From positions 3,534,001 to 3,598,000 of the forward strand of contig NW_027362946.1 in assembly GCF_046119375.1 (NCBI RefSeq): DNA of 64,000 nt, given 5' to 3'. The notes below the pieces were generated by a model that had not been told where the DNA came from, did not search any database, and saw nothing but the letters and a program-made list of their open reading frames with translations. A program made the position numbers and the translations under genes. Source of the DNA: Phyllobates terribilis. Taxonomy: Eukaryota. Position 1 is the first letter of the stretch. Each line of letters starts with the position of its first letter. Shown here piece by piece: positions 1-49,030 of this stretch.

Positions 1-1870
1 GAAGTCCTTCATCTTCACTTTTCTCCTTCATCCAGCACAGATCACCATCACTTCTTCCAGCCAGGACTTGTCTTTGAATAAAATAACACAGTTATGTAGA
101 GCATATTCCCCAACTTCTACATTACACAGCTGAATACAGACGTGCACCCACCATTAATATATAATTAGTCATTATGCAACCCACCATTCCAAACATAATT
201 GTAATCCATCCCTGCGCCCCAAATAACTGTAAATAGCCACTTTCCCCACCTAATAAATATGTCAATTAATTAGAGCCTGTACTCTTTCCCAGAATTTATT
301 ACCAGTCACACTCCTGCATCCGCAACACCCCCCACTCTGTACCTCCTGCTCCCCAATTCATTATATTTACATGCACCCTCTGCCCCAATTCATTATTTCC
401 TGCTCTCCCCACCCCCACCCTCTAGTCATCATTTACTCTCCCTCATCCCCCATTCACCATTTGCTTTCCCCACCCCACTCCCAATTCATCATGTGCTTTC
501 CCCACTCCCATTTTTCAATCCACCATTTGCTCTCCCCACCCCTAATTCACCGTTCGCTCTTCCCACCCACCACTCCCAATCCACCATGCGCTCATCCTCC
601 CCCCACTCTCAATCCTCCATGTGCAGCTCACCCCTCCACTCCCAATTCCCCATGTGCAGCTCACCCCCCCCACTGCTAATTCCCCATGTGCAGTTCATTC
701 TCCTCACCACTCCCAACATTCCCCCCACTTCCAACTCATCATTATGTGCAGCTCATCCACCCCCCACTGGCAATTCCCCATCACGTGCAGCTCATCCTCC
801 CCTACTGCCAATTCCCCATCACGTGCAGCTCATCCTACCCACACTGCTAATTCCCCATGTGCAGCTCATCCTCCCCCACTGCCAATTCCCCATGTGCAGC
901 TCATCCTCCCCCACTGATAATTCCCCATGTGCAGCTCATCCTCCCCCACTGCCAATTCCCCATGTGCAGCTCATCCTCCCCCACTGCTAATTCCCCATGT
1001 GCAGCTCATCCTCCCCCACTCCAAATTCCCCATCATGTGCAGCTCATCCTCTCCCCACTCCCAATTCCCCATCACGTGCAGCTCATCCTCCCCCACTGAT
1101 AATTCCACATGTGCAGCTCATCCTTCCCCACTGCCAATTCCCCATGTGCAGCTCATCCTCCTCCCACTCCAAATTCCACATCATGTGCAGCTCATCCTCT
1201 CCCCCCTCCCAATTCCCCATCACGTGCAGCTCATCCTCCCCCCACTGCTAATTCCCCATGTGCAGCTCATCCTCCCCCACTGCCAATTCCCCATGTGCAG
1301 TTCATCCTCCTCCCACTCCAAATTCCCCATGATGTGCAGCTCATCCTCCCCCACTGCTAATTCCCCATGTGCAGCTCATCCTCCCCCACTGTCAATTCCC
1401 CATGTGCAGCTCATCCTCCTCCCACTCCAAATTCCCCACCATGTGCAGCTCATCCTCCCTCCACTCCCAATTCCCCATCATGTGCAGCTCATCCTCCCCC
1501 CACTCCATTTAATTTTTTTTTAAAAAATAAAATTGTCATACTTACCCCACATACGATCCCTGCAGCATCCTGGCGCTCCTGTTGCGACGAGGAGATGCAC
1601 GCCGCCACCGGGTCCTCCTGACTCCTGAAGTATGAAGGAGCTGCTGCAGCGGCGCAGCTTCAGTAAGGAACTCGGTGCCAATATGTGCGCCGTCTAAGGC
1701 GGTGTGCGCCCCAGTGCTCGGCACTTTATTACAGCATGGAGTGCCGTGCATGGAGCGCCGTGAGCATACGCACAAGAGGGGGGCCCTGACTAGACCCGGC
1801 CCCTCTCTGTACTGCTGCTCACGGGGCCCCAAACAGCAGTAAGGGCAGTGATGCCCTGATGGCGGCCCTG
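1..1870. mobile_element. Right part of a non-autonomous hAT-like DNA transposon (full copy at 31571-36147)
   Basis: Ends in cctgatggcggccctg, followed by tctgcagg, the same terminus and flank as 36132-36155. Confidence 0.8.
620..1505. repeat. 35/38-bp minisatellite (ccccatgtgcagctcatcctcccccactgccaatt)
   Basis: Tandem units read directly; they account for the Pro/His/Ser-rich ORFs in all three + frames. Confidence 0.95.
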
Positions 1871-4587
1871 TCTGCAGGTGGAGGTATGTGGAGATTCCCC
1901 ATTATTGTCTCTCAGAATTTGCCATTATTCACACTATGCGTCTATTTTGTGTCTGTTTTTTTTGCATGGTGAAATAAATCATCCCTCTGATTGACCGCTG
2001 GCTGCTGGCAGGAAGGCAGCAGGGAGGCAGCTGACAATCAGTGTGATGTCGTCAGTCACGTCCCATCAAGAAAGCAGAGCCAAAGAGAAGCCGCTGCTCC
2101 GTCTACGTGACTCATTAGAAGCCGCAGAGTCACTGGCAGGAGCAGTCCGTGACCGCTCTGTTCCCGCAGACATTGAGGAAGGGCAGGCAGGCAGTTAGGA
2201 ACTATCTGCCTTTTACTTCTTCTGCCCATAGTTATAAAAATAATATAGTCCTGGATAAACTCTTTAACACACAGATATCATCCGTGGACAGGCTGTTCTT
2301 TTTCGTGGACCTATTCACTTGAATAAGCAAGTTTAGGGCAGGACAAGAAAATATCCCTAAATAATCTACTATGTCCGTGTTCACACCACGAGTGCAGCGT
2401 TCAGGCCAAACCTCCTCCGGTCCTCAAAGCGAAGCTCATTAATGGCCGCCATAAAAATCCACTTCTTCTTCCGGCATCATCCAGGATCAGATCCACAGAT
2501 TACTGCTTTATACCGGAATCAGTGATTGTATTATTACATAGAATTATTGGTGACGTTACATCTTCTCATCTTCTTCTCATTCAGGTCTCTACAATATCGG
2601 ATCCTCTCAGTGAAGATCTTCTATATAAGAGAAGTTTCCTGTCAAAGGTTGATAGGGAGCGAGACAAGATGGCGGAGAGGATATTCCACCTCACCCTAGA
2701 GATCCTCTTCCGGCTTACTGGAGAGGTGAGAGATTCTGATGACGTCACATTACATCATTCTTATCTATGGGAATAACAGATGGACAGAACTGGAGAGGTG
2801 AGGACTCTGGAAATGTCTGGAGGGAGATTTATTAATGTGTCTCTCCATAACCAGGATTACATAGTAGTGAAGAAGACCTCTAGTGAGCGCTGTCAGAACC
2901 CTGTGTCTGAGGGATGGGGAAGACCCCTGAGCCCAATCACAGGGCCTCCACCTCACCCCCTGATACATGAGGACATCAATGACCAAAAGATCCTAGAACT
3001 CGCCTACAAGATGATTGAGCTGCTGACTGGAGAGGTGACACTGCTGGGACATTATACAGTAATGCTATGAAGGGATCTGGGGGATGACGGTATCATTGTA
3101 TGTGTCAGGTTCCTCTAAGGTGTCAGGATGTCGCTGTCTATTTCTCCATGGAGGAGTGGGAGTATTTAGAAGGACACAAAGATCTGTACAAGGACATCAT
3201 GATGGAGGTTCCCCAGCCCCTCACATCACCAGGTAATAGACAGGACTGAATACACACGGCCTATAATTATCTGTATGTAAAGAATGAATTCAGTCCCTGT
3301 ATGTGTTTCCTCCAGATATATCCAGTAAGAGGACAACACCAGAGAGATGTCCCCGTCCTCTTCTTCCACAGGACTGTAAACAAGAAGATCCCAATGTTCC
3401 TCAGGATCATCAGGTAGATGGAGAGAAGGTTTCATGAGATCTCCCCTATGATGTGTAGACGGCTGTGAAAGTCTTGTGTTCAGTCTTGTTTTATCCACCA
3501 GTATTATATGTTTTCTACTTGTGTAGAATGGTGGAGATGGCAGGATTAGAGCTGATCATAGATGGGACTTCTCCATCTGTCTGTGACTTTTACAATATTT
3601 GTTTCAGGGTGAAGATCTGACCCATATTAATACTACAGAGACATATGGGAAGGGGTGATGAGCGGTGTAAAGAGGAGACTCCTACATATGACCACCCAGG
3701 TGAGTAATGACCACTAAATGCAGAGAAGTCACAGATCCTGTGGTCATTATATTATGAGTTTGATCACACAAGTAATTGACGTGCATTTTACTTGCAGATA
3801 GATTTGATGCATAACAAAAAAAGCTTTTCTTTTTTACACCTTTTTTGATTAACGCGTTTTGGTAGCAAAGTTGCATTGGTTAAATGGGATTTTATTTGCT
3901 GCAGAAAGGCGCCATGTCTCCAATTGTAATGTAGTTGTGAGTTGCCAGATTACAGCTGAATGTCAAGAAGAGAGCCGGGTCACACACAGAAGTCAGGCAG
4001 GTGGACTCTAAGCTGGAGAAGCCAAGGTCAATATCTAGCAGCAGTACACGTCCCGGAAGGGCAGTCAAGTGAGAAGCCAAACCATTCTGCGGTCAACAAG
4101 AAGTATGTAGGCAGATCAGAAAAGGGTTTAGAAGTAGGGTCAGGTAATAATCTGGTCAAGGTCCAGTTTTGATTCTCCATTGAACATTTCACTAGAAAAG
4201 ATCAGTGACAATACACACAAAGGAAATAAACGTGTCTATAACAAAACAGGTGTAATTGCAATAATGTTCTAGGAGAAATACTTCATTTTCTGGAACAATT
4301 TTAAGGGCGTCAACTATTTCAACCATGACTGTGTATAGAGAAATGTGAGACAATATAGAGATTAAAAATACAATTTATTAGATCGGAGTTGAAAACACAT
4401 AAAAATACAAAAAGCCATTTAAGAGGGATAAATGTAATCACAAAAAACAATGGAATGAGGCATCTGAATGAGTCCTGGATAAGTCCTAAGCATACAGCCT
4501 TGAAGGGGTATTCCCATCTCCAAAATCCTATCCCAAAATATAGTAGGTGTGATAATAATAATAGAAAATACCTCCAATTAGAAATGT

Positions 4588-4957
4588 ACTCCGAGTGTCC
4601 TGGGATCACCACGCTGACGTACCGACCCCCATCCCCTTACAGCAGAAGCACAAGGTGGCAGAGATAACATTCGTGACTGTTCCGCACACCGGATTGTTAT
4701 TGTCGGGGAAGTTCCGAATTCGGACCTCGGCCCCCATCAGTCTCCAGGTTGGTGTGGGTGCACAAGTCACTATTGAAGTCGGTGTCTTTGTTCTCATCGA
4801 TGGCATTCTTAGCCAATATGCTCCTGGTGGCATACGGATAGTCCGACACCTGGGAGGCCACTCTGGTCCTTGCTATGTTTGTGGCTGCAGGTGCAGGAGC
4901 AAATCCCAGAGCCAGAACCACAGATCCCAGTAGAATCAGAGAAGATACAAGATTCAT
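4588..4957 (-). pseudogene. Inverted, internally deleted F-type lectin copy
   Basis: ATG at 4957 gives [19 protein letters not shown]...[12 protein letters not shown]...CTHT. An 89-bp deletion (equivalent to 5296-5384) removes WWKLDL and the RxD motif and shifts the frame. The copy is 3'-truncated at 4588. Confidence 0.9.
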
Positions 4958-5079
4958 CCAGATTGTGCAGGAGCAGCTCCTGTGAGTACAGACTGCAGGG
5001 AATAGTCACTGATTACCAGGGAACCAGCATTTATCAGATGTGGAGATTACACAGGACCTTCACTTACATCTCCTGCAGG

Positions 5080-5583
5080 ATGAATCTTGTATCTTCTCTG
5101 ATTCTACTGGGATCTGTGGTTCTGGCTCTGGGATGTGCTCCTGCACCTGGAGCCACAAATATAGCAAGGACCAGAGTGGCCTCCCAGGTGTCGGACTATC
5201 CGTATGCCACCAGGAGGATATTGGCTAAGAATGCCATCGATGGGAACAAAGACACCGACTTCAATAGTGACTTCTGCACCCACACCAACCTGGAGAAGGA
5301 TCCCTGGTGGAAGCTGGACCTGGGCCAGAGCTACAAGATATCCAGCGTCGCCATAACCAACAGGATTGACTGTGGTCTGGAGCGACTGATGGGGGCCGAG
5401 GTCCGAATCGGGAACTCCCCCGACAATAACATTCCAGTGTGCGGCACAGTCACGAATGTGGTCTCTGCCACCTTGTAGCGACCCTCCATCCCCTTACAGC
5501 AGAAGGACGTCAGCGTGGTGATCCCATGACACTCGGAGTACCTGTCGATGTATGAGGTCGAGGTTTATTCAGACTCCAATTAG
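5080..5583 (+). pseudogene. F-type lectin (fucolectin-like) copy with signal peptide, broken by a 30-bp micro-inversion
   Basis: Signal-like N-terminus, AIDGN and H-x26-R-x-D-x4-R motifs are present. 5477-5506 is the reverse complement of the B-copy sequence and creates TAG at 5476-5478. The remaining [14 protein letters not shown]-type tail runs to TAG at 5581-5583. Confidence 0.92.
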
Positions 5584-8235
5584 AAATGTGGTATAGTTCT
5601 CCTGATTCTTTGTCACTTACCCCATGTGCAGAGCATTTCAGTAGCTTAGGTATCCATAGTTATGACCACTAGCAACTAACTTGCAATGCCCTGAACATGG
5701 GGTAAGCAACATAGCGAATCAGAAGAACTATACATTTCTAATTGGAGATATTTGCTAATCTTATTTTTATTACACCTACTACATATTGGGATAGTTTCTC
5801 GGAGATGGGAATACCCCATCTTACATGTTTTGGCGTGTATTTTTATCTGTAGATTGTAATGTAATAAACCTTATTTTTAATCCTCCCTTTATTGTCTCAA
5901 ACGTTTCTGCCTGTATGTATTATGTTTGTCGATGTTTGTATATTAGGGGTTGAGTACCATGGGATTTGTGAACAGGTGGCTCACCACTGTCATAGGTCAT
6001 AGTTTCATTATACTTTGATTTGTAAAGAATTATGTATAGAGAAATGTTATAAAATATAAGGCATTGATATTAAAAAATAATAAAATCAGATTTATTCTTG
6101 GCAGATGACTGTGGTGTCAAACCAGATACCTATGAAAAGCGTGCCATTATTCCAGCTATACCTCCAGCCCTTCAGAGCAGAAATCAATCATCTGAGCCTT
6201 TTCAATCCGTCATCTACTTGGATTCATCACAGACTGTTAAGCAAAATGAAAGCCAGAGAAGGGATGTCGAACATCAAATAATTCCCACAGGGAAGAAACC
6301 ATTTTCCTGTTCAGAATGTGAGAAATGTTTTAAAACTAAATATAAATTGCTTACACATCAGAGAAGTCACACAGGAGAAAAGCCGTTTTCATGTTCAGAA
6401 TGTGGGAAATGTTTCAGCGATAAGTCATATTTGCTTAAACATTACAGAAGTCATACAGGAGAGAAGCCATATTCATGTTCAGAATGTGGGAAATGTTTTA
6501 TCCAGAAACGAGATCTTCATAAACATCAACAATTTCACATAGGAGAGAAGCCATATTCATGTTCAGAATGTGGGAAATGTTTTATCCAGAAACGAGATCT
6601 TCATAAACATCAACAATTTCACATAGGAGAGAAGCCATATTCATGTTCAGAATGTGGGAAATGTTTTATCCAGAAACCAGATCTTCATAAACATCAAAGA
6701 ATTCACACTGGAGAAAAGCCATATTCATGTCAAGAATGTGGGAAATGTTTTGAACATAAATCTAAATTGCTTATGCATCAAAAAAGTCACACAGGAGAAA
6801 AGCCATTTTCATGTTCAGAATGTGCGAAATGTTTCAGCAATAAGTCAGATTTGCTTAAACATTACAGAAGTCATACAGGAGAGAAGCCATATTCATGTTC
6901 AGAATGTGGGAAATGTTTCACCCAGGGTTCATGTTTAATACAGCATATACAGTTACACAAAATAAAAAGGGATTAATAGAAGGACTTACTAGACCGATCG
7001 CAGAGACGATTCAGTTTAGCTGGAGGGAAGCACTCAAACGAACCGTTATGGAACAGGACCCCCGCTTACACAAATATGTATAACCCAGCATGAGTATAGA
7101 TCAATATTCGGCCTGATCTTTTATGCCGACGGGGGCGCTGCCCACACACTCCCCTGTGATGACCTCACGTGGGCTGGTCTCCACCCTTCTTGGTTTTATT
7201 CAATCTCTAATTTTCTGCGATAACTCCTCACTGGTTGATCGCAGAAGTTAGCAAGTGATGCCATCTTTTTTATTGCAAATTTACCTGTGATGGATCAACC
7301 CCGTACTCCAAGATTTTGCCACATGGGGGTTGTCGTAGCGCCTATGCAGCTAATGGGACATAATGTTACAAAGTGGGGCGAATATTGTGGATCACATATT
7401 GTTGGACATTTTGTGATGTGACCAAAGCACTCCTGGCCCCCACCTTCCTGTGCTCACTTAGCAGGGGCAAACAGACAATGTGCTGATTAATGGGTTGTTG
7501 CCTAACTGCTGTCTGGGAGCCTACTGTGGGTATTATCTGGTGAGAACAATGGGTGCTAAAAATAGCCTGTGTGATTCTCTATAAAACCTGCTTGTAAGAA
7601 TAAAAGTTTTAGTCCATCTTGGAGACACACTGCGATAGTCATATTTTATATATCCCAGTGTAAGAAAAGCCTTTCCATGTCAGGGGCCGGCAGAAGAAGA
7701 TTGGACATCTGCGGATGGGGTAACTAGCTCCCGTCACACTACCTTTACTTAGAGACCACACATTACATGACTGCTGTCTGTTATTTTCATTTTCAGAAAG
7801 GCTCTAACTTGCTTCTTTAAGAGTGGTCTTGGCCAGTTTTGGATTGCATCTACTTTACTGATCTGGGGTTTGATCTCGCCTCTACCTACTACATATCCTA
7901 GTTATTTGGCCTCTTTATTTCCCATGGCAAAATGTTTTCAGATTTATAGAAAACCCTGCCTTCCTGAGAGGATCAAACACCGACCGGACCTTTTGCAGGT
8001 GACATCTCCAATCTGGGCTGAAGATTACGATATATAAAGTATGATGCAGTGTAATTCTTACGGATTGCGAGGATCCAGCCCATGGCACTCTGGAAGGTGG
8101 CCAGGGCTCCCTGCAGACAAAACAGCATCCGGACATATTGGAAACATCCGTTGGGCATAGAGAAGGCAGTCTTCTCCTTGGCTTCTTGTGACATAGGGAT
8201 TTGCCAATATTTCTTAGTTAAATCCAAGGTGGTTA

Positions 8236-9596
8236 TGTGGCGCCCCTGAGAGTTCAGTCGCCACAGAGGTACTGCACTTCATGGAACGAGGTGTGGTATC
8301 TCCTCTCCGAGGTAAGGATGGAGCACCACACAGGGCCCCACCACACATCCAACACTACACACTCCCATTCTGAAGGGGGTTTAGAGCACAATGTGGTACC
8401 CCAGTCCTGAATGGAGGAGTAAGGGCGGGACCAAAAGTAGGGGGAACCTTGTAGTGAGTAGGGTGGATGAAGCACTTTACGGTTATACTAATACATCCAT
8501 ATAAATATGGATGCCATCTTTAATACCGGGTCTTTTGTCGCAGTTCCCTGGAGGTGACAGTTAGTACAAGCTGCAGCTGCCTCAGGAGGCTGTGATTCCC
8601 GGTCTCAGGCCTTGAGATTGGGGGCTGGGGCAGAGTTGAGTTACAGCTGGCTGTGTCCTATGTCTTAGTCCACACCAGAAGGCCTAGGAGGGGAGCAGAG
8701 GAGAAGAGCTCCACAGGCGAAAGGATCTCAGGGGATGTGGACGGAGCAGAGTTGCCACCTGCTACCCTTATTCTGGCCCCGCCAGAGAGACTCCTGCCGC
8801 AAGAGGGGGTACCGGTCCCCGATTATCTGACTTTGTACTCCAAGTCTCTGTCAGAAAAGTCCGAAGGCTGAAGTGGATCCCAGGGGGAATATGGATGGAG
8901 CGGAGTCGCCACCTGTATCCCCTTAATCTGCGTCTATCCAGAGGGACCCCAGCCTTATGCCACGTTTACACCCCAGTCACCAATAAGGGACCTAGGCGGT
9001 CCGGGGGCTACAAGCCACCTTCAGCGGACATTGCGGTACCCGTACGGGACTTAGTAGGGGCACGAGGCGGTTCTAGTACAGCAAGTGAGAGGAACACACT
9101 GGTGGAGGGGTTTTGTCTGGTGCACCCGAGCTACCCGGAGTGAGCTGAACCCCATCCTGGTGGCCGCAGCGCGCCGTGAGGAACAAAGAGAAGCTTTGTG
9201 GCTGAAAACAAGTCTACCGTGAGTAAAACCTGGATGACTTCATACACCGCCTCTTCTCTCTCATTTCTGCGCGGCACCGCACCCACCATTCCTCTGCACT
9301 GCACTTCTTCTACTCTGCCCTGAGGCCTGGCTCCACCTGCGGGGAGCTATTCCATCCCAAGCTGCTAGAACACCGGCCTCAGAGGACTGGCGCAGCGCTG
9401 GTGGTCCTCAGCAGAAACCACAGGTGGCGTAGCCGACAAATAACCACTCATCCACTACCCCATATTTTTAATGTGTGCGCCCTGGCCACGGACTGAGCCA
9501 AGGCCACCACTGCATCCCCCTCTACCACCGGCCCGCAGTCCGAGTACACCTTTCCCAGGGAGGGCTAACGCTACCTGAGTAGTAGTGGGTCACAAA
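8236..9596. mobile_element. Solo-LTR-like element inserted in the Gmr1 RT
   Basis: Starts tgtggcgcccc and ends near gggtcaca. Flanked by GTTA at 8232-8235 and 9597-9600. The RT frame (YITTLDLTK) is split exactly here. Its left end is near reverse-complementary to the right end of 54395-55612. Confidence 0.8.
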
Positions 9597-10077
9597 GTTA
9601 TATACTTTGCCAGCCCACGTCTCGCGATCAGGTCATCGACACACGGCATCTGATATGCGTTGAACTTGGACTTCATTCAGCTTCCTATAATCGTTACAGA
9701 ACCTCCATTCGCCATCAGGTTTTGGAACCAGGACAATAGGGCTACACCACCCTCTCTGATTCCTCAAATACTCAGAGATTCCTTGGAGAATAGCTCTCGC
9801 CAGGCCTCAGGAATTAGATAGGGCTTCAAGTTCACCCGCACATGGGATTAAATCAGAACCTCACGTTCTATGACCTTTGTACAAAATAGCAAATCTAAGA
9901 ACAGGTCCCTGTTCTGCTGCAACAACTCCCACACTGCTATTTTTGAGCTTTCAACGGCATCTTTGCTATTATGACTCTTTCAACATCTGCTTCAGGCTTG
10001 TCCAGAAAACACGGAGCTTCAACTGGCTCCCTATCTTGCCACATATGTACACTTTGTACAGTTTTAGTCTTCTTGGT

Positions 10078-11115
10078 TATTATTATTAATTAATATAGCG
10101 CCATTAATTCCATGGCGCTTTACATGTGAAAAAGGGGTATACATAGCAGAAAACAAGCACAATAGTTTAAACAAAAACAAGTCACCGACTGGCACAGGAG
10201 GCGAGAGGACACTGCCCGTGAGGGCTCACAGTGTAGAAGGGGGGGTGAGGATACCGTAGGTGAGGGTACAGCTGGTCATGCAGTGATGGTTACTGCAGGT
10301 TGTAGGCTTGTCGGAAGAGGTCGGTCTTCAGGTTCCTTTTGAAGGTTTCCACGGTAGGCGCGAGTCTGTCGTGTTGGAGTAGAGAGTTCCAGAGTAGGGG
10401 GGATGCATGGGAGAAATCTTGTATGCAATTGTGGGAAGAGGAGAAAGGAGCAGAGTAGAGAAGGTGGTCCTGTGAGGATCGAAGGTTGCATGCAAGTAGG
10501 TACCGGGAGACTAGATCATAGATATATAGAGGAGACAGGCTATGGATGGTTTTGTATGCCAAGGTTAGGGTCTTGAACTTGAGTCTCTGGGCAATGGGGA
10601 GCCAGTGCAGGGATTGGCAGCGGGAAGAGACAGGAGAATAGCGGGGGGACAGGTGCATTAGTTGGGCAGCAGGGTTTAGGATAGATTGCAGGGGTGCGAG
10701 AGTGTTAGAAGAGAGACCACAGAGCAGGAGGTTGCAGTAGTCGAGGAGAGAGATGATGAGGGCACGCACTAGTGTTTTTGCAGATTCATGGTTGAGGAAT
10801 GTGCGGATCCGGGAAATATTTTTGAATTGGAGTCGGCATGAAGTGGAAAGGCCTTGGATATGAGGTTTGAAGGAGAGATTAGAGTCAAGTGCTACCCAGA
10901 GGCAGCGAGACTGGGGAGAGTGGGGAGAGTGGGTGGCCATTGACTTTGATAGATAGGTCAGGAGGGGGGTTGAGTGAGATGGTGGAAATATGATGAATTT
11001 GGTTTTATCCATATTAAGTTTTAGGAATCTAGCAGAGAAGAAAGATGAAATAGCAGACAGACATTGTGGTATTCTGGTTAGTAAGGAGTTGATATTGAGT
11101 ACAGAGAGGTAGATC
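10078..11115 (-). mobile_element. L2/CR1-clade LINE, 5'-truncated 3' end
   Basis: ORF 11012-10290 has L2 RT C-terminal motifs (LDYCN, LHWLP, FKRNLKTDLF) and is followed by a (TAA)n tail at 10078-10090. Confidence 0.88.
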
Positions 11116-13751
11116 TGTGATGGACTTTGTAGTTCCCTTCACCAAGCTTCTCTACCACCTCATAGGGGTCTTACCATTTGGCCAAAAACTCTCCACTGTG
11201 GGAATTAGTACAAGGACTCTGTCCCCGGGGCTGAACTGCCTCACCCTGGCTGACCAGTTGTAGACCCTAGATTGAGCCCCTTGTGCCTGGAGGAAATGTC
11301 CTTTTATGACGGGCATCACCTTCGCAATCAACTCCTACATTTTAGTGACATCCTCAATGATGCTCCGATTGGGGCGTAACCTCGGCTTCCCAGGAATCCT
11401 TCGCTATATCAAGGAGACCCATTGCATGTCGACCATATAGAAGTTCAAATGGAGAGAATCCGGTTGAGGCTTGTGGAACCTCCCGGATAGAAAACAACAG
11501 ATACGGGAGGAGACAGTCCCAGTCTTGACCGTCCTTCTATATGACCTATTTAAGCATACTCTTCAATGTTTTATTTAACCTTTCCACAAGGCCATCCATC
11601 TGGGATGGTACATGGATGTCTTCAGTTGTGTAATTTGTAGGGCCTTACACAGTTCCCTCATCACCTTACTCATAAAGGCTTTTCCTTGGTCGGTAAGTAT
11701 CTCCCCCGTTAATCCGGTCCAGGAAAAAATGTGTACCAACTCGTGTGCTTTACTTACCACAGAGGAGTTTCTCAGTGGAACTGCTTCAGGGCACCACGTA
11801 GCATAGTCAAGGATGAACAATATGTATTGATGCCCACAAGCAGATTTAACCAGGTGATGGACCCAGTCCATGGCAATTCGTTCAAACGGCACTTCTATGA
11901 TGGGTAATGGTACGAGGGGACGTCGAAAGTGAGAGGAGGGGTGATTATCTGGCAGGTGGGACAGGACCTGCAATACTTTAAGATTTCCTGGTGATATCCA
12001 GGCCAATAGAACCTCCGCACAACCACTTATCCACTTTTATCCACATCCAAATGGTCAAGACATGTAAATGGACCATGTCCATCATCCTTCATCTACATGG
12101 TCAGGGTACCAACAATTGCTCCACTATTTCCTCTCTGACCTTAATAACGCTGTACAATAACTCCCCACTCAACATAAAATAGGGAAACCTGGTGTCAGCC
12201 CCTGGCTCTTGCGCTATACTGTTTAAGACAGTTACATTATGTAATGTCTCCTTTAGCATTAGCTCCCTATCACGGGCGGACCTAACATTTTCACCGGTCA
12301 CCCCTACATCAGGTATGTTGGCCCCAAGGGACACTACCTTGTCATCCCCCACAAGGACACAGAAGGGAAACCCGTCAGACTCTGAGTGTGGTAACAGTTC
12401 TTTAGGGGTGACCCGTCTCTTAATCGAGCACTGTCGCCCTCCTCCAAAAGTCCCAAAACAAACAAAAGTCCTGGCCTATAATAATGGGGTGCAGTAAGTC
12501 CTAGACCACGCCAATCTCGTGGGACTCAGTACCTTGGCCCATTCCAATGTCCACTCTGGCCACTGGATAGCCTTTAGCATCCTCGTGAAAGCAATTGACG
12601 TCAACCTTCTTTCCAGGGATCAGCTGGAGAGGAAATGTGGCCCTCACTAGGGTCAACAAACTTTCTAAGACTAGCAGTCCAGTCACTTGCTGACCATTCC
12701 CCATTACGGGACAAGCTTGTGGCCCCTTATTGCATGGAAAGATCGCACTGCAAACTGGATACACATAGTATGAACAGTGGCAACCCAGGCTACAGTCCAT
12801 CTGCTCGGAAGTCAGGGGACAATGCGGTGCTATATGGCCTGGGCCGTGATATTTCCAGCATATGTTGACAGCTGGAACCTTTGGTATAACCTCCCCTGAG
12901 CCTTTTGATCTTGGACGACCCACCCCTTTTTGGGTGTCCCCAAGGAACCATCGACCCCGTGATATCTTTCGAACAGTCTGACCAGGTCATCCGTATTCCG
13001 GGGATCCCCCTGGGCAACCCAAGTCTGTATTGGCCTCGGAAAGGAGTGCACAAACCGGTACATTACCACTCGCTCTACCATCTGCACAGGGGTAGAGGTC
13101 TTTGCCTGCAACCATTTTTGAACGTGGTTCAGCAAATCAAACATTTGGTAGGGAGGGGGTTTGTCACAGTGATATGCCAAGCGGTGGACACGTTGTACCC
13201 TGACAGTCATTGTCACTCCTAAGCGCATCTTTTAAGGCTAAGTCAGAGTAGGCCTTCTGGAGCTCCCCCGTTAAGTATGGCATCAGCACATTGCCCTGGT
13301 GAGAGTTTCTCCCTCTCGTCGAATCTTTCAAAAATGGCCTCTGTGTCGTCACCCTTGGTCATTTTCTGCAGGGCTCTCCTTACTGCCTTCTGGATGGAGA
13401 CATCATCAGCTGACGTTGGAGTCGAATCTACCGCCATGCCACGAACCTCTGTCGCATAAGCAGCTTATTTGGCTCCTGTTGCGCCAGCTGTTGTCGGTTC
13501 TGCTGCTACAGCTGGGCTTGTACCAGGTGTTTCACTAGGTTCTCCATGCTATCTGATGTTATTTGCTGGCTTATGGCTGCCTTCGTCCAGGGCATGCAGT
13601 ACCTCTGTAGCAGTCACACGTGTTCCCTGGGAACTCTGCCCGTATTTCTAACACCCATTGTGGGAATGCTACTCACTTGGGTGCGTGGTGAGGTAACACG
13701 GGAACCGTTTCCATTTATATGTCCTTGCTGGGTTATTGGTTCTTCATAAAC

Positions 13752-15299
13752 CGATGCGGCACATAGACCCCGTAATGATCGCGGCTCTCTCCAGCAGCCG
13801 CCGATATCAGCGCTGTATTGCAGTGTATTGCCGTGCAGAGACCGTCTATCTGCACAGCAATATCAGTGCCAGCCACCGGCCTATCAGAGGCCAGCAGCTG
13901 ACCTCTGCGTCCCAGCGCGGCGACGTGTGACGTCACTGCCATGTACAGATGTCAGCTGCTGGCCTCTGATAGGTCGGTGGCTGGCACTGGTATTGCTGTG
14001 CAGAGAGCCGGTCTCTGCGCGGCAATACACTGCACTACAGCGCTGATATTGGCGGCTGCTGGAGAAAGCCGCGATCGTTACGGGGTCTGTGCCTGCGGGC
14101 CACAGGTGCAGAAAGGACGCCGAGGGAACGGAGGACAGGTGAGAATATATATATATTTTTTTCTCTGTCATGTCAAATACAGCACAGGGGACCTGTGCTC
14201 AGTATAGGGAGGGGAGCACCGTGTGCAGTATGGGGGGACGGGGACCCTGAGCGCAGTATAGGGGGACGGGGACCATGAGCGCAGTATGGGGGGGGACCCT
14301 GAGTGCAGTATGGGGGGACGGGGACCATGAGCGCTGTATGGCGGGGGACGGGGACCCTGAGCGCAGTATGGGGGGGGACGAGGATCCTGAGCGCTGTATG
14401 GGGTGGGCTGGGACCCTGAGCGCTGTATGGGGGGGGGCGGGGACCCTGAGTGCAGTATGGGGGGATGGGGACCCTGAGTGCAATATGGGGGGACGGGGAC
14501 CCTGTGCGCAGTATGGGGGGGGGCGGCCATGTGCGCAGTATGGGGGGGACACCTGGATGGGGGACATGTCTGCAACATGGGGACCTGGATGGGGGACATG
14601 TCTGCAACATAAGGACCAGGATGGGGGACCATGTCTGTAATATGGGGGACCATGTCTGCAATATGGGGGACCTGGATGGGGGACCATGTCTGCAATATGG
14701 GGGGACCTGGATGGGGGACCATGTCTGCAATATGAAGGCCATGTCTGCGATATGGGGGACCTGGATGGGGGACCATGTCTGCAATATGGGGACCATGTCT
14801 GCAATATGAAGGCCATGTCTGCAATATGGGGGACCTGGATGGGGGACCATGTCGGCAATATGGGGGACCATGTCTGCAATATGGAGGACCTGGATGGGAG
14901 ACCATGTCTGCTGGATGGGGGACCTGGATGGGGGACCATGTCTGCAATATGAAGGCCACGTCTGCAATATGGGGGACCATGTTGGCAATATGGAGGACCT
15001 GGATGGGAGACCATGTCTGCTGGATGGGGGACCTGGATGGGGGACCATGTCTGCAATATGGGGGACCTGGAGGGGAGACCATGTCTGCAATATGGCGGAC
15101 CTGGAGGGGAGACCATGTCTGCAATATGGGGGACCTGGAGGGGAGACCATGTCTGCAAGATGAGGACCAGTTCAAAAGGTGTATAGAAAATAAAATGGTA
15201 TCACTAAAAATGTCACTTTGTCATGCAAATAATGCGGCCCCCCAAATTAAATGTTTTTCCATGTGCGGCCCATATGCCCAGCTGAGTTTGAGACCCCTG
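13752..15299. mobile_element. Non-autonomous hAT (Charlie-like) element, left TIR deleted in copy A
   Basis: Right end gtttgagacccctg followed by gtctagga. The intact counterpart is 47160-48783. Contains an internal inverted repeat (about 13775-14080) and minisatellites. Confidence 0.75.
14225..15160. repeat. Two adjacent G-rich minisatellites (about 27-bp gggggacggggaccctgagcgcagtat; about 32-bp ggggacctggatgggggaccatgtctgcaatat)
   Basis: Tandem units read directly; a shorter version is at 47665-48645. Confidence 0.9.
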
Positions 15300-15549
15300 G
15301 TCTAGGACAACCACCTCTGTGATATATACCTCCCATCAACTGTGTGTCCGAAAGCCACCTTACATCATCTTAGACCGAACAAGGAGTTAATGGCTGAAAT
15401 ACATACAAACATGTATACAGCCATAGTGAAGTAAGTGAAGGTGCATAGAAACTGACAGCTTCCTTCATGCACATACACTCCCATCATCATTCATCTTAGT
15501 GACGCAGAACTCGCTCTATTCAGAGGGTGCAGATAGATAAATAGGGATA

Positions 15550-17230
15550 CTCCTCTCCGTACACCTCGTACACACGTGGCCCCGCTCCGTACACCTCGTA
15601 CACACGCGGCTCCGCTCCGTACACCTCGCACACACGCGGCTCCGCTCCGCACACCTCGTACACACGCGGCTCCGCTCCGTACACCTCGTACACACGCGGC
15701 TCCGCTCCGAACATCTCGCACACACGCGGCTCTGCTTCGTACGCCTCGTACACACGCGGCTTTGCTCCGTACGCCTCGTACACACGCAGCTCTGCTCCGT
15801 ACGCCTCGTACACACGTGGCCCCGCTGCGTACACCTCGTGCACACGCGGCTCCGCTCTGTACGCCTCGCACACACGCAGCTCCGCTCTGTACGCCTCGCA
15901 CACACGCGGCTCCGCTCCGTACGCCTCGTACACACGCGGCTTTGCTCTGTACGCCTCGTACACACGCGGCTCTGCTCCGTACACCTCGTACACACGTGGC
16001 CCCGCTCCGTACGCCTCGTACACGCGCGGCTCCGCTCCGTACGCCTCGCACACGCGCGGCTCCGCTCCGTACGGCTCGTACACGCGTGGCTCCGCTCCGT
16101 ACGGCTCGTACACACGCGGCTCTGCTCCGTACACCTCGTACACACACGGCTCTGCTCCGTACACCTCGTACACGTGCGGTTCCGCTCCGTACACAAGCGG
16201 CTCCGCTCCGTACGCCTCGCACACACGCGGCTCCGCTCCGTACGCCTCGCACACATGCGGCTTTGCTCCGTACGCCTCGTACACGCGCGGCTCCACTCCG
16301 TACACCTCGTACACAAGCGGCTCCGCTCCGTACGCCTCGCACACACGCGGCTCCGCTCCGTACGCCTCGCACACATGCGGCTTTGCTCCGTACGCCTCGT
16401 ACACGCGCGGCTCCGCTACGTACACCTCGTACACACGCGGCTCCGCTCCGTACACCTCGTACACACGCGGCTCAGCGCCGTACACCTCGTACACACACGG
16501 CTCTGCTCCGTACACCTCGTACACGTGCGGTTCCGCTCCGTACACCTCGTACACACACGGCTCTGCTCCGTACACCTCGTACACACGCGGCTCCGCTCCG
16601 TACACCTCGTACACGCGCGGCTCTGCTCCGTACACCTCGTACACACTCGGCTCCGCTCCGTACACCTCGTACACACGCGGCTCTGCTCCGTACACCTCGT
16701 ACACACACGGCTCTGCTCCGTACACCTCGTACACACGCGGCTCCGCTCCGTACGCCTCGTACACACTCGGCTCCGCTCCGTACACCTCGTACACACGCGG
16801 CTCTGCTCCGTACACCTCGTACACACACGGCTCTGCTCCGTACACCTCGTACACACGCGGCTCTGCTCCGTACACCTCGTACACACGCGGCTCTGCTCCG
16901 TACACCTCGTACACACGTGGCTCCGCTCCGTACACCTCGTACACACGCGGCTCTGCTCCGTACACCTCGCACACACACGGCTCTGCTCCGTACACCTCGT
17001 ACACACACGGCTCTGCTCCGTACACCTCGTACACGCGCAGCTCCGCTCCGTACACCTCGTACACACGCGGCTCTGCTCCGTACACCTCGTACACACGCGG
17101 CTCTGCTCCGTACACCTCGTACACGCACGGCTCTGCTCCGTACACCTCGTACACACGCGGCTCTGCTCCGTACACCTCGTACACACGCGGCTCTGCTCCG
17201 TACACCTCGTACACACACGGCTCTGCTACA
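15550..17230. repeat. 30-bp CpG-rich minisatellite, about 56 units (acacctcgtacacacgcggctccgctccgt)
   Basis: 30-bp periodicity is visible in line-to-line registration of the sequence. Confidence 0.97.
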
Positions 17231-27674: not shown

Positions 27675-28828
27675 GTGACCTGATTGTCCCAACCTGGATT
27701 CTTCAAAACGTTTTTGAGGGTTAGGTGATGGTCAATTGAGCAGATCTGAATTCTTCCAGCTAGGACTGTGGTCCCTTAAGCTGGCGTCCTGTAGATTCTC
27801 TGTCTGGGGAACAGAGGCAGATTCCCCCCCCCCCACCCCCCTTCAATAGGTCACAACTATTCTTCAGGCCATCATCCACAGGTCCGGGGGAAGGTGAGAT
27901 GTGGTCAACTCTCATTGTTTGAGTATTTAATCAAACTGCATAGTTTGTCCTTCCCTGCTAGCAAGTAAACAAGTTGCCTGGACTGATACAATGGTAGCAA
28001 CATATTAGCAAAAATCAATTGTTCAATGACCTGCGTTCCTGTCATCCACGGATAGCAAGACAATATGCTGAAACAAACGTCAACTCAAGAGTCAACGTTA
28101 AGGCTCATATAACAATGGCCTATGTTTCTTGACCCACCAAAGAAGCACGTCTGGCTTAATCAAGAACAAATGCTGTGTCGTCACATTGGGGAATATGAGA
28201 AAATCACTGATGTTTAAAAGTTGTACAAGAGCTCAGGAGCGAAAGTGCGATAGGGACTTATCCGGTATGAAATAAAATATTTTTAACAGGGTTCTGCTAA
28301 CCTGGTATGGCTGTGTTCACAAAACAGTTATCAAGACGTAGGTAATCAGCTGCTGCAGATCCACAGGTTGTCAGACCAAACCAAAGTAGATGGAGGAAAA
28401 ACATGGATGGTCCACGCTGCTGGTAGATTGATGAAAGGATCAGGATACACAGAACTGTATTAATTGTCGTTTTATTATCGACACCTTTCGAAGTTGACAC
28501 TTCTTAAGGATATAACCACATGTAGACACATATAACAGTCAGACAGCTTTATAAGAGGGGCATTCAAATAATGGCGCCAAAGAGGCCCATGATGTGTCAA
28601 AGTTCACCTTTTACCGTTATGACAACTCTGAAAAACCAAACGCTGATGAAAATCTGATCCAAAACACTGAGGAAAATAAGACTGGATTGTTAAGTATGAG
28701 AAAAATCACTGACGTCTGAATGAGGCCCTACATTGAAAAACCTGTGAGCTTTTACAAAGCCTACCTGAGATAAAATGGAGGATGCTCGGTTTTCATCGGG
28801 TACAATGGAAGATGTGCTCTATTTCAGT

Positions 28829-30222: not shown

Positions 30223-30357
30223 GTAAAACCAGCTCACCATAAAAGCCAGTAAAGTAAATAATATAATTAAGTGGAGGAGGCTCTCTTTCTTTCTTTGAGC
30301 ACCTCAAAGAAAATCTCTCTGTTTCCAATTGAAAGAAAGAAGGAGGCGACGTAACTT

Positions 30358-36930: not shown

Positions 36931-39900
36931 ATGGACAGAGACAAGATGGCGGAGAGGATATTCCACCTCACCCTAGAGATCCTCTTCCGGCTTACTGGAG
37001 AGGTGAGAGATACTGATGACGTCACATTACATCATTCTTATCTATGGGAATAACAGATGGACAGAACTGGAGAGGTGAGGACTCTGGAAATGTCTGGAGG
37101 GAGATTTATTAATGTGTCTCTCCATAACCAGGATTACATAGTAGTGAAGAAGACCTCTAGTGAGCGGTGTCAGAACCCTGTGTCTGAGGGATGGGGAAGA
37201 CCCCTGAGCCCAATCACGGGGCCTCCACCTCACCCCCTGATACATGAGGACATCAAAGACCAGAAGATCCTAGAACTCACCTACAAGATGATTGAGCTGC
37301 TGACTGGAGAGGTGACACTGCTGGGAATGCTGGGACATTATACAGTAACGCTATGGAGGGATCGGGGGGATGACGGTATCATTGTATGTGTCAGGTTCCT
37401 ATAAGATGTCAGGATGTCGCTGTCTATTTCTCCATGGAGGAGTGGGAATATTTAGAAGAACACAAAGATCTGTACAAGGACTTCATGATGGAGGTTCCCC
37501 AGTCCCTCACATCACCAGGTAATAGGACTAATTACACACGGCCTATAATTATCTGTATGTAAAGAATGAATTCAGTCCCTGTATGTGTTTCCTCCAGATC
37601 TATCCAGTAAGAGGACAACACCAGAGAGATGTCCCCGTCCTCTTCTTCCACAGGACTGTAAACAAGAAGACCCCAATGTTCCTCAGGATCATCAGGTAGA
37701 TGGAGAGAAGGTGTCATGAGATCTCCCCTATGATGTGTAGACAGCTGTGAGGGTCTTGTGCTCAGTCTTGTTTTATCCACCAGTATTATATGTTTTATAC
37801 TTGTGTAATGAGAGCGGTGGAGATGGCAGGATTAGAGCTGATCATAGATGGGACTTCTCCATCTGTCTGTGACTTTTACAATATTTGTTTCAGGGTGAAG
37901 ATCTGACCCATATTAATACTACAGAGACATATGTGAGGGGTGATGAGCGGTGTAAAGAGGAGATTCCTACATATGACCACCCAGGTGAGTAGTGACCACT
38001 AAATGCAGAGAAGTCACAGATCCTGTGGTCATTATATTATGAGTTTGATCACACAAGTAATTGACGTGCATTTTACTTGCAGATAGATTTGATGCATAAC
38101 AAAAAAAGCTTTTTTTTGCACCTTTTTTGATTAACGCATTTTGGCAGCAAAGTTTCATTGGTTAAATGGGATTTTATTTGCTGCAGAAAGGCGCCATGTC
38201 TCCAATTGTAATGTAGTTGTGAGTTGCCAGATTACAGCTGAATGTCAAGAAGAGAGCCGGGCCACACACAGAAGTCAGGCAGGTGAACATCTAAGCTGGA
38301 GAAGCCAAGGTCAATATCTAGCAGCAGTACACGTCCCGGAAGGACAGTCAAGTGAGAAGCCAAACCATTCTGCGGTCAACAAGAAGTATGTAGGCAGATC
38401 AGAAAAGGGTTTAGAAGTAGGGTCAGGTAATAATCTGGTCAAGGTCCAGTTTTGATTCTCCATTGAACATTTCACTAGAAAAGATCAGTGACAATACACA
38501 CAAAGGAAATAAACGTGTCTATAACAAAACAGGTGTAATTGCAATAATGTTCTAGGAGAAATACTTCATTTTCTGGAACAATTTTAAGGGCGTCAACTAT
38601 TTCAACCATGACTGTGTACAGAGAAATGTGAGACAATATAGAGATTAAAAATACAATTTATTAGATCGCAGTTGAAAACACATAAAAATACAAAAAGCCA
38701 TTTAAGAGGGATAAACGTAATCACAAAAAACAATGGAATGAGGCATCTGGATGAGTCCTGGATAAGTCCTAAGCATACAGCCTTGAAGGGGTATTCTCAC
38801 CTCCAAAATCCTATCCCAAAATATAGTAGGTAGGATAATAATAATAGAAAATGCCTCCAATTAGAAATGTACTCCGAGTGTCCTGGGATCACCACGCTGA
38901 CGTACCGACCCCCATCTTCTCTGATTCTACTGGGATCTGTGGTTCTGGCTCTGGGATGCGCTCCGGCACCTGTAGCCACAAACATAGCAAGGACCAGAGT
39001 GGCCTCCCAGGTGTCGGACTATCCGTATGCCACCAGGAGCATATTGGCTAAGAACGCCATCGATGGGAACAAAGACACCGACTTCAGTAGTGGCTTCTGC
39101 ACCCACACCAACCTGGAGAAGGATCCCTGGTGGAAGCTGGACCTGGGCCAGAGCTACAAGATATCCAGCATCGCCATAACTAACAGGATGGACTGTGGTC
39201 TGGAGCGACTGATGGGGGCCGAGGTCCGAATCGGGAACTCCCCTGACAATAACATTCCAGTGTGCGGCACAGTCACAAATGTGGTCTCTGCCACCATGTC
39301 CTTTTGCTGTAAGGGGATGGAGGGTCGCTACGTCAGCGTGGTGATCCCAGGACACTCGGAGTACCTGTCGATGTGTGAGGTCGAGGTTTATTCAGACTCC
39401 AATTAGAAATGTGGTATAGTTCTCCTGATTCTTTGTCACTTATCCCATGTGCAGAGCATTGCAGTAGCTTAGGTATCCATAGTTATGACCACTAGCAACT
39501 AACTTGCAATGCCCTGAACATGGGGTAAGCGACATAGCGAATCAAAAGAACTATACTACATTTGTAATTGGAGATATTTGCTAATCTTATTTTTATTATA
39601 CCTACTACATATTGGTATAGTTTCTCAGAGATGGGAATACCCCATCTTCATTGTTTTTATGGCGTGTATTTTTCTCTGTTGCTTTAGATTGTAATGTAAT
39701 AAAGCTTATTTTTAATCCTCCCTTTATTGCCTCAAAAGTTTCTGCGTATATGTATTATGTTCGTCGATGGTACGTTAGGGGTTCAGTACCATGGGATTTG
39801 TGCACAGGTGGCTCACCACTGTCTTAGGTCATAGTTTCATTATACTTTGATTTGTATAGAATTATGTATAGAGAAATGTTATAAAATATAAGGCATTGAT

Positions 39901-47150: not shown

Positions 47151-47159
47151 GAGACAGTC

Positions 47160-48783: not shown

Positions 48784-49030
48784 GTCTAGGACAACCACCT
48801 CTGTGATATATACCTCCCATCAACTGTGTGTCCGAAAGCCACCTTACATCATCTTAGACCGAACAAGGAGTTAATGGCTGAAATACATACACACATGTAT
48901 ACAGCCATAGTGAGGTAAGTGAAGGTGCATAGAAACTGACAGCTTCATACACTCCCATCATCATTCATCTTAGTGACACAGAACTCGCTCTATTCAGATG
49001 GTGCAGATAGATAACTCGGGATACTCCTCT

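What the first reader, a model, noticed from the sequence alone, without database searches (positions are those of the whole stretch)
4572..5589. Host lectin gene captured as an inverted pair inside a MITE arm, inside a zinc-finger gene intron
Seen: a 986-bp insert (4588-5573) lies between perfect 16-bp direct repeats CTCCAATTAGAAATGT (4572-4587, 5574-5589), which belong to the left arm of a MITE. The insert is a head-to-head pair of F-type lectin copies (minus from 4957, plus from 5080) around a 121-bp spacer. There is no poly(A) tail, and the left junction has only a 2-nt GT microhomology. Known: L1-type retrocopies normally carry poly(A) and lack introns; fold-back templated insertions arise in break repair. 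Inferred: a DNA-repair capture of a secreted fucose-binding lectin gene at a staggered break in a hairpin-forming MITE. It predates the segmental duplication, since copy B has the same repeats, and it might be mobilisable with the MITE (Pack-MITE-like).
Basis: partly seen in the sequence, partly recalled or inferred. Interest (0 to 1): 0.85.

Follow-up and report, generated by a model that had tools for sequence, protein, structure and literature searches.

The report
Palindromic fucolectin retrocopy inside a frog MITE
An intron-less, head-to-head double copy of a fucose-binding lectin message was pasted once, most likely by a reverse transcriptase that folded back on its own product, into a hairpin transposon in a zinc-finger gene intron of the golden poison frog; it then spread only because that zinc-finger gene was duplicated many times, so it is a decaying pseudogene of unusual shape and not a mobile captured gene.

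Summary
Perfect 16-bp direct repeats (4572-4587, 5574-5589) flank a 986-bp insert. The insert holds two head-to-head fragments of an F-type lectin coding sequence around a 118-nt spacer. It lies in the stem of a very abundant T2/Kolobok-type hairpin MITE, in an intron of a C2H2 zinc-finger gene of Phyllobates terribilis.

Contigs from what is probably an independent DNA sample reproduce the left junction and the whole head-to-head centre without a difference, so it is not an assembly fold-back. Uninterrupted MITE copies carry the 16-mer once, so it is a true target-site duplication.

The interpretation needs changing. The lectin arms have no introns, whereas the chromosomal fucolectin genes span 2.9-7.8 kb and DNA-versus-RNA contigs place an intron at about 5440/5441. 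The source was therefore spliced RNA, not genomic DNA. The best model is one reverse-transcriptase-mediated insertion with cDNA snap-back, or a twin-priming variant of it.

I found no sign of Pack-MITE mobility. The MITE arms are more than 1000 times deeper in reads than the insert. All 11 annotated lectin ORF loci that were looked up lie next to or inside gene models, and most of the protein families recorded for those models are KRAB or zinc-finger. Copy B (38855-39412) is the same insert with a 457-bp deletion.

First-stage notes on other pieces of this genome describe what looks like the same cassette. Interest is modest.

The parts
4505..4587 (+). Left arm of a T2/Kolobok-type hairpin MITE. 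The terminus reads AGGGGTATTCCC and is preceded by TTGA.
   Evidence: It is complementary to 5731-5820. Read depth is 9e4-1.5e5, against about 24 for single-copy sequence, and the family boundary lies at about 4503. The AGGRR + TTAA signature is described in PMC6004289.
4572..4587 (.). Left copy of the 16-bp target-site duplication.
   Evidence: It is a perfect repeat of 5574-5589. Uninterrupted family members run straight from ...AGAAATGT into GTATAGTTCT (loose ends and joints at 4588).
4588..4959 (-). Antisense lectin arm. It covers coding nt -2 to about 462, lacks 89 bp between CTGGAG repeats, and is frameshifted.
   Evidence: It retains the ancestral 'NNP' codons seen in the chromosomal lectin P0003.
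4960..5077 (.). 118-nt asymmetric spacer, the loop of the palindrome. It may be 5'UTR sequence of the template RNA.
   Evidence: It is only marginally self-complementary (p about 0.05). X6 contig 4945-5107 spans it with 0 differences. Its origin is not resolved.
5078..5573 (+). Sense lectin arm. The ATG is at 5080 and it covers coding nt 1-494 with no intron. It is disabled by the micro-inversion (TAG at 5476-5478) and by a TGA at 5527-5529.
5477..5506 (.). 30-bp micro-inversion that is specific to copy A.
   Evidence: It equals the reverse complement of copy B 39300-39329 at 29 of 30 positions. Other family copies read [12 protein letters not shown] normally. X6 contigs cover it only at depth 0-6, so an independent sample does not confirm it.
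5574..5589 (.). Right copy of the target-site duplication.
   Evidence: In other family members the sequence before 5574 reads like the left arm (loose end at 5574).
5590..5817 (+). Centre and right arm of the MITE.
   Evidence: Depth is 8e4-3e5 and the family boundary is at 5817, followed by consensus TTTAA.
38855..39412 (+). Copy B: the same target-site duplication and the same insert with a 457-bp deletion (equivalent to 4634-5090, ATC microhomology). This leaves a 179-codon ORF, 38867-39406, whose ATG and TAG lie in the two repeat copies.
   Evidence: RNA contigs carry the joint 4630->5091 at the same depth as the flanking intron.
6104..6976 (+). C2H2 zinc-finger exon of the host gene, downstream of the MITE.
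   Evidence: A 292-aa ORF with an 84-nt finger periodicity.

Best explanation
A spliced fucolectin mRNA was reverse-transcribed directly into a staggered break (14-16 nt) in the stem of a T2/Kolobok-type MITE, inside an intron of a zinc-finger gene. Synthesis was primed inside the coding sequence at nt 494, with no poly(A), and ran towards the 5' end of the RNA. The 3' end of the new cDNA then folded back and copied the cDNA itself (snap-back), which made an antisense arm. That arm ends 32 nt short of the first priming site and was joined to the other target end through a 2-nt overlap. Fill-in of the stagger produced the 16-bp duplication. A twin-priming variant, in which each target end primes its own cDNA on the same RNA region, would give the same final structure. 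The palindrome was born non-functional because it is 3'-truncated. It has since decayed through an 89-bp deletion, a 30-bp micro-inversion, stop codons, and a 457-bp deletion in copy B. It multiplied only as a passenger of the tandemly duplicating zinc-finger gene. Shown here: the structure, the target duplication, the absence of introns, the passive spread and the decay. Inferred: the identity of the enzyme and the order of the steps.
For: The target duplication is real. The 16-mer is unique in the family consensus, as shown by loose ends at 4588 and 5574 and by joints 4588->5616 with MITE sequence between them; chance expectation is 0. The duplication encloses both arms, so the inverted pair arrived in one event. 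There is no intron between the ATG and nt 494 in either arm. By contrast, P0003, P0127 and P0015 on the 817-Mb chromosome span 7.8, 2.9 and 6.2 kb for 174-179 aa. DNA contigs of a paralogue stop aligning at 5440/5441: X6 shows this with the same variants as the RNA, and X15 record 10 (847 nt) aligns only over 5295-5440. RNA contigs at depth about 225 run through to 5568. An intron in mid-domain is described for fish and oyster F-lectin genes (PMC5712786). The antisense arm ends inside the span of the sense arm (4588 corresponds to 5541, before 5573), and the sense side may carry the extra 118 nt, which is what snap-back predicts. At sites where the arms differ, copy B usually agrees with one of the two, so the pattern fits one source sequence followed by later drift. 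cDNA snap-back that gives antisense sequence at the upstream target junction is documented for non-LTR target-primed reverse transcription (PMC11371274). A 14-16 bp duplication lies in the usual range for LINE insertions (my own knowledge).
Against: There is no poly(A) or other LINE 3' tail. Neither possible nick site (AATAC|CTCC or AAATGT|GGTA) resembles the L1 TT|AAAA consensus. I could not read the DNA of the parent gene. Its exon junctions, its 5'UTR (is the spacer really UTR, and of which arm?) and the supposed CUCC microhomology at the priming site are therefore untested. The intron evidence is indirect: it rests on gene spans and on the ends of contig alignments in a diverged paralogue. 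One earlier first-stage note (s1-204902) calls another copy of the cassette 'intron-containing'; I could not examine that copy. X6 record 18 shows a paralogous copy in which similarity stops exactly at 5079. This hints that the spacer may belong to the minus arm, which fits simple snap-back less well.
Confidence: 0.6

Rival explanations
1. The lectin DNA was reverse-transcribed elsewhere and captured passively. A free, self-primed hairpin cDNA, or a double-stranded cDNA, was ligated by end joining into a staggered break that arose in the cruciform-prone MITE, with no target-primed synthesis.
For: There is no poly(A), the target sequence is not L1-like, and the junction overlap is only 2 nt. 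The empty MITE is a -89.7 kcal/mol hairpin with the insertion site in a perfectly paired stretch of stem. X6 record 18 suggests the spacer may belong to the minus arm, which this model tolerates.
Against: A spontaneous break with a 14-16 nt stagger is unusual. This duplication length is typical of LINE endonuclease insertions. The antisense arm stops inside the span of the sense arm, as expected if the sense arm was anchored first.
Confidence: 0.2
2. One reading: a fold-back templated insertion copied from genomic lectin DNA during break repair, with no RNA intermediate.
For: No poly(A), short microhomologies, inverted architecture, and a palindromic target. The sequence just upstream of the plus-arm ATG (...tctcctgcag|G) looks like a splice acceptor, so it could be intron sequence.
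Against: Both arms are intron-less across a region where the family has an intron. The only single-exon lectin models found in the genome are these zinc-finger-embedded copies themselves.
Confidence: 0.12
3. A two-step origin: an ordinary retrocopy inserted first, and a later local inverted duplication created the second arm.
For: The arms differ by 4-9%, and palindromic rearrangements (deletion, micro-inversion) clearly continued at this locus.
Against: The target duplication abuts the outer end of each arm. A later duplication would therefore have had to land exactly between the left repeat and the retrocopy's 5' end. The divergence between arms is explained by age.
Confidence: 0.05
4. A Pack-MITE: the MITE carrying the lectin transposes as a unit.
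For: The cassette lies between intact-looking terminal inverted repeats of a very successful family.
Against: Depth of the insert is about 1e-3 or less of the MITE arms and is comparable to the unique intron flank. Every annotated copy looked up lies beside or inside neighbouring gene models, and where protein families are recorded for those models most are KRAB or zinc-finger. The window's two copies lie in a 16-kb duplicated unit.
Confidence: 0.02

Closest known systems
cDNA snap-back junctions in non-LTR (R2) target-primed reverse transcription (PRINT experiments, PMC11371274)
   Same: An antisense copy of the inserted sequence sits next to the upstream target junction, joined head-to-head to the sense copy. 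It is attributed to the cDNA 3' end priming on the cDNA itself before the 5' junction forms.
   Different: Those are engineered templates at the rDNA site in cultured human cells, with a defined 3' module. Here the event is a germline-fixed insertion of a host mRNA fragment in a frog, at a non-specific site, with a 16-bp duplication, no 3' module and no poly(A).
L1 twin priming / 5'-inverted retrocopies (Ostertag and Kazazian model, recalled from my own knowledge; discussed in PMC2837659 and PMC2912911, which came up but which I did not open)
   Same: A target duplication, an inverted 5' part, a direct 3' part, and microhomology at the junctions.
   Different: In twin priming the two parts are adjacent, essentially non-overlapping stretches of the RNA. 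Here both arms cover the same roughly 460 nt. There is also no poly(A) and no TT|AAAA target.
Processed pseudogenes / retrocopies
   Same: An intron-less copy of a multi-exon gene, flanked by a target duplication, dead on arrival and then decaying.
   Different: It is 3'-truncated inside the coding sequence, lacks poly(A), and is palindromic.
Pack-MULE / Pack-MITE gene capture
   Same: A host gene fragment lies between the terminal inverted repeats of a non-autonomous DNA transposon.
   Different: The fragment has its own 16-bp duplication, so it is an insertion into the MITE and not an acquisition by it. There is no evidence that the composite ever moved.
T2-MITE / Kolobok non-autonomous elements of Xenopus (PMC6004289)
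   Same: A TTAA target and an AGGRR terminus (here AGGGG), very high copy number, and a long hairpin shape.
   Different: This is a dendrobatid family. I did not establish sequence relationship to any named Xenopus subfamily.
Inverted-repeat pseudogenes that give hairpin RNAs and endo-siRNAs in mouse oocytes (my own knowledge, not checked here)
   Same: An inverted duplicate of a coding sequence that would fold into a long dsRNA if transcribed.
   Different: No small-RNA or editing evidence is available here, and copy A is barely seen in the RNA contigs.

Membership tests
Processed retrocopy (RT-mediated copy of a spliced mRNA) | Lacks the introns of the parent gene | tested here: met
   Both arms are continuous from the ATG to nt 462 or 494. 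The chromosomal paralogues span 2.9-7.8 kb. DNA contigs break at 5440/5441 where RNA contigs continue. The evidence is indirect, because the parent's DNA could not be read.
Processed retrocopy (RT-mediated copy of a spliced mRNA) | Flanking target-site duplication | tested here: met
   A 16-bp perfect repeat that occurs once in uninterrupted MITE copies.
Processed retrocopy (RT-mediated copy of a spliced mRNA) | 3' poly(A) tail | tested here: not met
   The plus arm ends ...TTATTCAGA directly against the repeat, with no A-run at either end.
L1-type endonuclease insertion | First-strand nick at a TT|AAAA-like site | tested here: not met
   The candidate nick sites are AATAC|CTCC and AAATGT|GGTA. 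The consensus is recalled from my own knowledge.
Twin priming (5' inversion) | Inverted and direct segments are adjacent, non-overlapping parts of one RNA | tested here: not met
   Both arms cover coding nt 1 to about 462.
cDNA snap-back during target-primed reverse transcription | An antisense copy at the upstream junction that is contained within the span of the sense copy, with a loop at the RNA 5' side | tested here: met
   The minus arm's outer end corresponds to 5541, inside the plus arm, which ends at 5573. There is a 118-nt asymmetric spacer between the arms. Whether the spacer is the 5'UTR of the plus arm was not testable.
Pack-MITE / Pack-MULE | The composite element occurs at unrelated loci, each with the transposon's own target duplication | tested here: not met
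   The 11 annotated lectin ORF loci looked up lie beside or inside neighbouring gene models; KRAB or zinc-finger families are recorded at four of the seven loci and none at the other three. Insert depth is similar to unique-flank depth and far below MITE depth.
T2-MITE / Kolobok non-autonomous element | TTAA target and terminal AGGRR | tested here: met
   The terminus is AGGGGTATTCCC on both ends. The family consensus flank after 5817 reads TTTAA. This particular copy has the degenerate flanks TTGA and ATCT.
F-type lectin (fucolectin) domain | Sequence match to the domain family and to annotated fucolectins | tested here: met
   Pfam PF22633 at E 3e-23 and PF00754 at E 6e-14. Identity is 82-84% to the chromosomal P. 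terribilis fucolectin-6-like protein.
Functional lectin gene | Complete open reading frame with signal peptide and C-terminus | tested here: not met
   In copy A both arms are broken: a frameshift in one, and an inversion with a stop plus a TGA in the other. All copies lack the last 11 or so codons of the parent.

The most novel reading that the evidence does not exclude
When the host zinc-finger gene is transcribed, the roughly 370-bp near-perfect lectin hairpin in its intron (MFE -752 kcal/mol, z -49) may be processed into endo-siRNAs or heavily A-to-I edited. A rapidly duplicating zinc-finger gene family would then carry a trans-acting silencer of secreted fucolectin genes. The multiple retained palindromic (A-type) copies would in that case be maintained rather than simply decaying.
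Probability: 0.06. Interest if true: 0.7.

Novelty: new variant of a known kind. Interest (0 to 1): 0.33.

Why it matters
It looks like a natural, germline-fixed example of a retrocopy whose shape matches the snap-back by-product seen so far in engineered R2 insertions. It occurs in an amphibian, where poly(A)-independent retroposition of host mRNAs is poorly documented. It also has a practical consequence. At least eleven NCBI gene models named 'fucolectin-like', 'fucolectin-1-like' or 'pentraxin fusion protein-like' in Phyllobates terribilis are fragments of this one dead retrocopy, carried along by zinc-finger gene duplication, and they inflate the apparent size of the lectin family. Beyond that it is a decaying pseudogene. 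Nothing indicates a function or mobility.

Tried and rejected
1. Fetching genomic DNA of the parent-like genes and of the other cassette copies with the look-up of encoding contigs. Every look-up (P0001, P0003, P0005, P0121, P0122, P0127, P0015) returned gene tables but no DNA, because the sample file is too large. Exon junctions, the 5'UTR and the codons after nt 494 could therefore not be read.

2. Testing whether the spacer is a degenerate palindrome, that is, 5'UTR in both arms. Local alignment of its two halves is only marginal (p about 0.05), so I do not claim this.

3. Testing whether the spacer is the 5'UTR of the highly expressed lectin mRNA. That mRNA (depth about 225) aligns only from about 5080 onwards. 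It is a diverged, P0015-like paralogue, so the result is uninformative.

4. Assembly fold-back artefact. Rejected, because X6 contigs span 4571-4680 and 4945-5107 exactly.

5. Pack-MITE. Rejected on depth and on genomic context.

6. Different paralogous sources for the two arms. Not needed, because the three-way comparison with copy B fits one source plus drift.

7. Literature search for natural snap-back retrocopies. I found only experimental R2 snap-backs and L1-associated chromosomal foldbacks. PMC12016303 has no mention of foldback or hairpin insertions.


Full report
**What is there**

The window comes from Phyllobates terribilis. The ORF at 38867-39406 is found residue for residue in NCBI assembly GCA_046119375.1.

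At 4572-4587 and 5574-5589 there are two perfect copies of CTCCAATTAGAAATGT. Shuffled sequence gives none. Between them lie 986 bp (4588-5573), made of three parts:
- an antisense lectin fragment (4588-4959, ATG at 4957-4955 on the minus strand);
- a 118-nt spacer (4960-5077);
- a sense lectin fragment (5078-5573, ATG at 5080).

The arms pair over 224 nt at 96% and over 93 nt at 91%. Both translate as an F-type lectin domain behind a signal peptide. Pfam gives PF22633 at E 3e-23. Identity to the chromosomal 'fucolectin-6-like' protein P0003 is 82-84%.

**The surrounding element**

The sequence 4505-4587 plus 5590-5817 is a single long hairpin, with DNA folding energy -89.7 kcal/mol. The 16-mer is fully base-paired in its stem.

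Its ends read AGGGGTATTCCC. Among thousands of family members, the consensus flank after 5817 is TTTAA. This is the TTAA + AGGRR signature of the T2-MITE family, which is attributed to Kolobok transposons in Xenopus (PMC6004289).

A C2H2 zinc-finger exon begins near 6104.

**Is it real, and is the repeat a target duplication?**

I laid Logan contigs of four runs on 4300-6100.

DNA run X6 comes from a different sample and study from the best-matching runs. It has contigs that match 4571-4680 and 4945-5107 with no difference, at single-copy depth (about 24). These cover the left junction and the entire head-to-head centre, so an assembly fold-back is excluded.

The MITE arms reach word depths of 9e4-3e5 in this species and 2.5e4-9e4 in a second species. 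The insert reaches only 5-180.

Contigs from other family members run from ...AGAAATGT straight into GTATAGTTCT... (loose ends at 4588; joints 4588->5616 with MITE sequence between). Contigs that enter 5574 from the left read like the left arm. The family therefore carries the 16-mer once. Its duplication here is a target-site duplication made by this insertion. Its true length is 14-16 nt, because GT at the left junction could come from either partner.

**RNA or DNA origin**

Neither arm contains an intron between the ATG and its outer end.

The three chromosomal fucolectin genes I could look up span 7.8, 2.9 and 6.2 kb for proteins of 174-179 residues.

In one search, RNA contigs of a strongly expressed paralogue (depth about 225) align continuously from 5391 to 5568. 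The DNA contig of X6 carrying the same variants stops at 5441. In the second species, an 847-nt DNA contig aligns only over 5295-5440, with unrelated sequence on both sides. That is the behaviour of an exon boundary at about coding nt 361.

A review of the family reports that the domain is split by an intron in mid-domain, near the Glu-Cys turn, in striped bass and in oyster (PMC5712786). This matches the position just upstream of the conserved PVCG.

I conclude, with moderate confidence, that the template was spliced mRNA. The inference is indirect, because no tool returned the parent's DNA.

**How the palindrome arose**

The duplication encloses both arms, so the inverted pair entered in one event. 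A later inverted duplication would have had to land exactly between the left repeat and the retrocopy.

The outer end of the antisense arm corresponds to 5541, which is 32 nt inside the sense arm's end at 5573. The 118-nt spacer is asymmetric.

This is the architecture expected if three things happened in turn:
- first-strand cDNA was primed at the right-hand target end, at coding nt 494;
- it ran to the 5' end of the RNA, folded back and copied itself;
- it was then joined to the left target end through the 2-nt overlap.

Exactly this class of junction, called 'snap-back', is described for R2 target-primed reverse transcription in human cells (PMC11371274). There, antisense insert sequence is fused to the upstream target.

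Classical twin priming does not fit, because its two parts are adjacent pieces of the RNA and not the same piece. A variant with strand displacement or two RNA molecules would give the same end product and cannot be excluded.

Several features are atypical for L1. There is no poly(A) and the copy is truncated inside the coding sequence. It lacks the last 11 or so codons; the parent continues ...YSDSVTNRNKVCS. The nick sites are not TT|AAAA. So the enzyme is unknown, and passive capture of a self-primed cDNA at a structure-induced break remains a serious alternative.

In a three-way comparison with copy B, each difference between the arms is usually private to one sequence. The antisense arm keeps ancestral codons (NNP), whereas all sense arms share NIP. 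This fits one source followed by drift.

**After insertion**

The window contains a duplicated unit of about 16 kb (1-15736 against 33975-49210, 92-98% identical).

Copy B (38855-39412) has the same repeats and the same outer junctions. It lacks the equivalent of 4634-5090, with an ATC overlap at the deletion joint. Copy A holds the native ATG and the spacer, which B lacks. A is therefore the older form, and B is a deletion derivative.

Copy A in turn has three lesions:
- an 89-bp deletion between CTGGAG repeats in the antisense arm;
- a 30-bp micro-inversion in the sense arm (5477-5506, the reverse complement of B 39300-39329), which creates a stop;
- a TGA at 5527.

NCBI annotates at least eleven loci of this cassette on unplaced scaffolds of 1.8-13 Mb. 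They are single-exon genes of 540 nt (B-type, 179 aa) or 450 nt (A-type, 149 aa). All that I looked up lie next to or inside other gene models, and most of the protein families recorded for those models are KRAB or zinc-finger. Together with the depth ratios, this shows passive amplification with the host gene family and gives no support for Pack-MITE movement.

**Expression**

RNA contigs carry the B-type deletion joint together with upstream intron sequence, at the same depth (about 9.5) as the flanking intron. This looks like read-through of the host pre-mRNA and not a lectin transcript.

Copy A is barely represented in the RNA contigs. If transcribed, the insert would fold into a hairpin of about 370 bp (MFE -752 kcal/mol, z -49). 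That keeps a hairpin-RNA role possible but untested.

**Earlier notes of this scan**

First-stage notes on other pieces of the same genome describe what looks like the same cassette. One calls a copy 'intron-containing'. I could not examine that copy; if it were correct it would weaken the RNA-origin argument.

**Verdict**

The interpretation needs correcting: this is a palindromic, poly(A)-less processed pseudogene that was inserted once into a MITE and spread by segmental duplication. It is not a captured gene and not a mobile Pack-MITE. It is a neat natural example of a known class of reverse-transcription by-product, and of modest interest.

Noticed in passing
window 38867-39406: In copy B the 457-bp deletion puts an ATG in the left target repeat in frame with the lectin, and a TAG in the right repeat ends it. 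The result is a 179-aa ORF that NCBI annotates as 'fucolectin-like'. The identical protein is annotated on four scaffolds, and near-identical ones at three further loci. A-plus versus B differences number about 9 non-synonymous to 7 synonymous, so there is no clear constraint. RNA depth equals that of the surrounding intron.
   Followed up: partly
window 5549-5563 and related loci: At one A-type locus an NCBI gene model of 795 aa starts 19 nt after the 149-aa lectin ORF. That corresponds to the ATG at 5549 inside the lectin tail, with GAG|GT motifs just downstream. The cassette may therefore be predicted, or used, as an alternative first exon of the zinc-finger gene.
   Followed up: no
window 744-1504 and 34866-35784: A 35-nt tandem repeat (ATGTGCAGCTCATCC...) forms long proline/serine-rich ORFs upstream of each zinc-finger unit. 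It is part of the duplicated unit.
   Followed up: no
window 15550-17227, 30359-31341, 49024-49210: A GC-rich 30-nt satellite (CTCCGCTCCGTACACCTCGTACACACGCGG) occurs in three places. Adjacent arrays are a 26-nt one (17679-19513, 98% matches) and a 34-nt one (28827-30225). Together they account for the window's high G+C of about 50%.
   Followed up: no
window 7915-8475, minus strand: ORFs with a reverse-transcriptase-like motif (...KTAFSMPNGCFQYVRMLFCLQGALATFQ...), typical of an LTR-type retrotransposon fragment, lie just downstream of the zinc-finger exon.
   Followed up: no
window 51953-52247: A 17-nt repeat containing TTAGGG-like units (CTAGGGTTAGGGTTGTG) forms an interstitial telomere-like array.
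   Followed up: no
window 4483-4604 and 5581-5824: The MITE family is also very abundant in RNA contigs (depth 1e4-7e4) and in a second species' DNA. It is therefore old, shared between species, and widely embedded in transcripts.
   Followed up: partly
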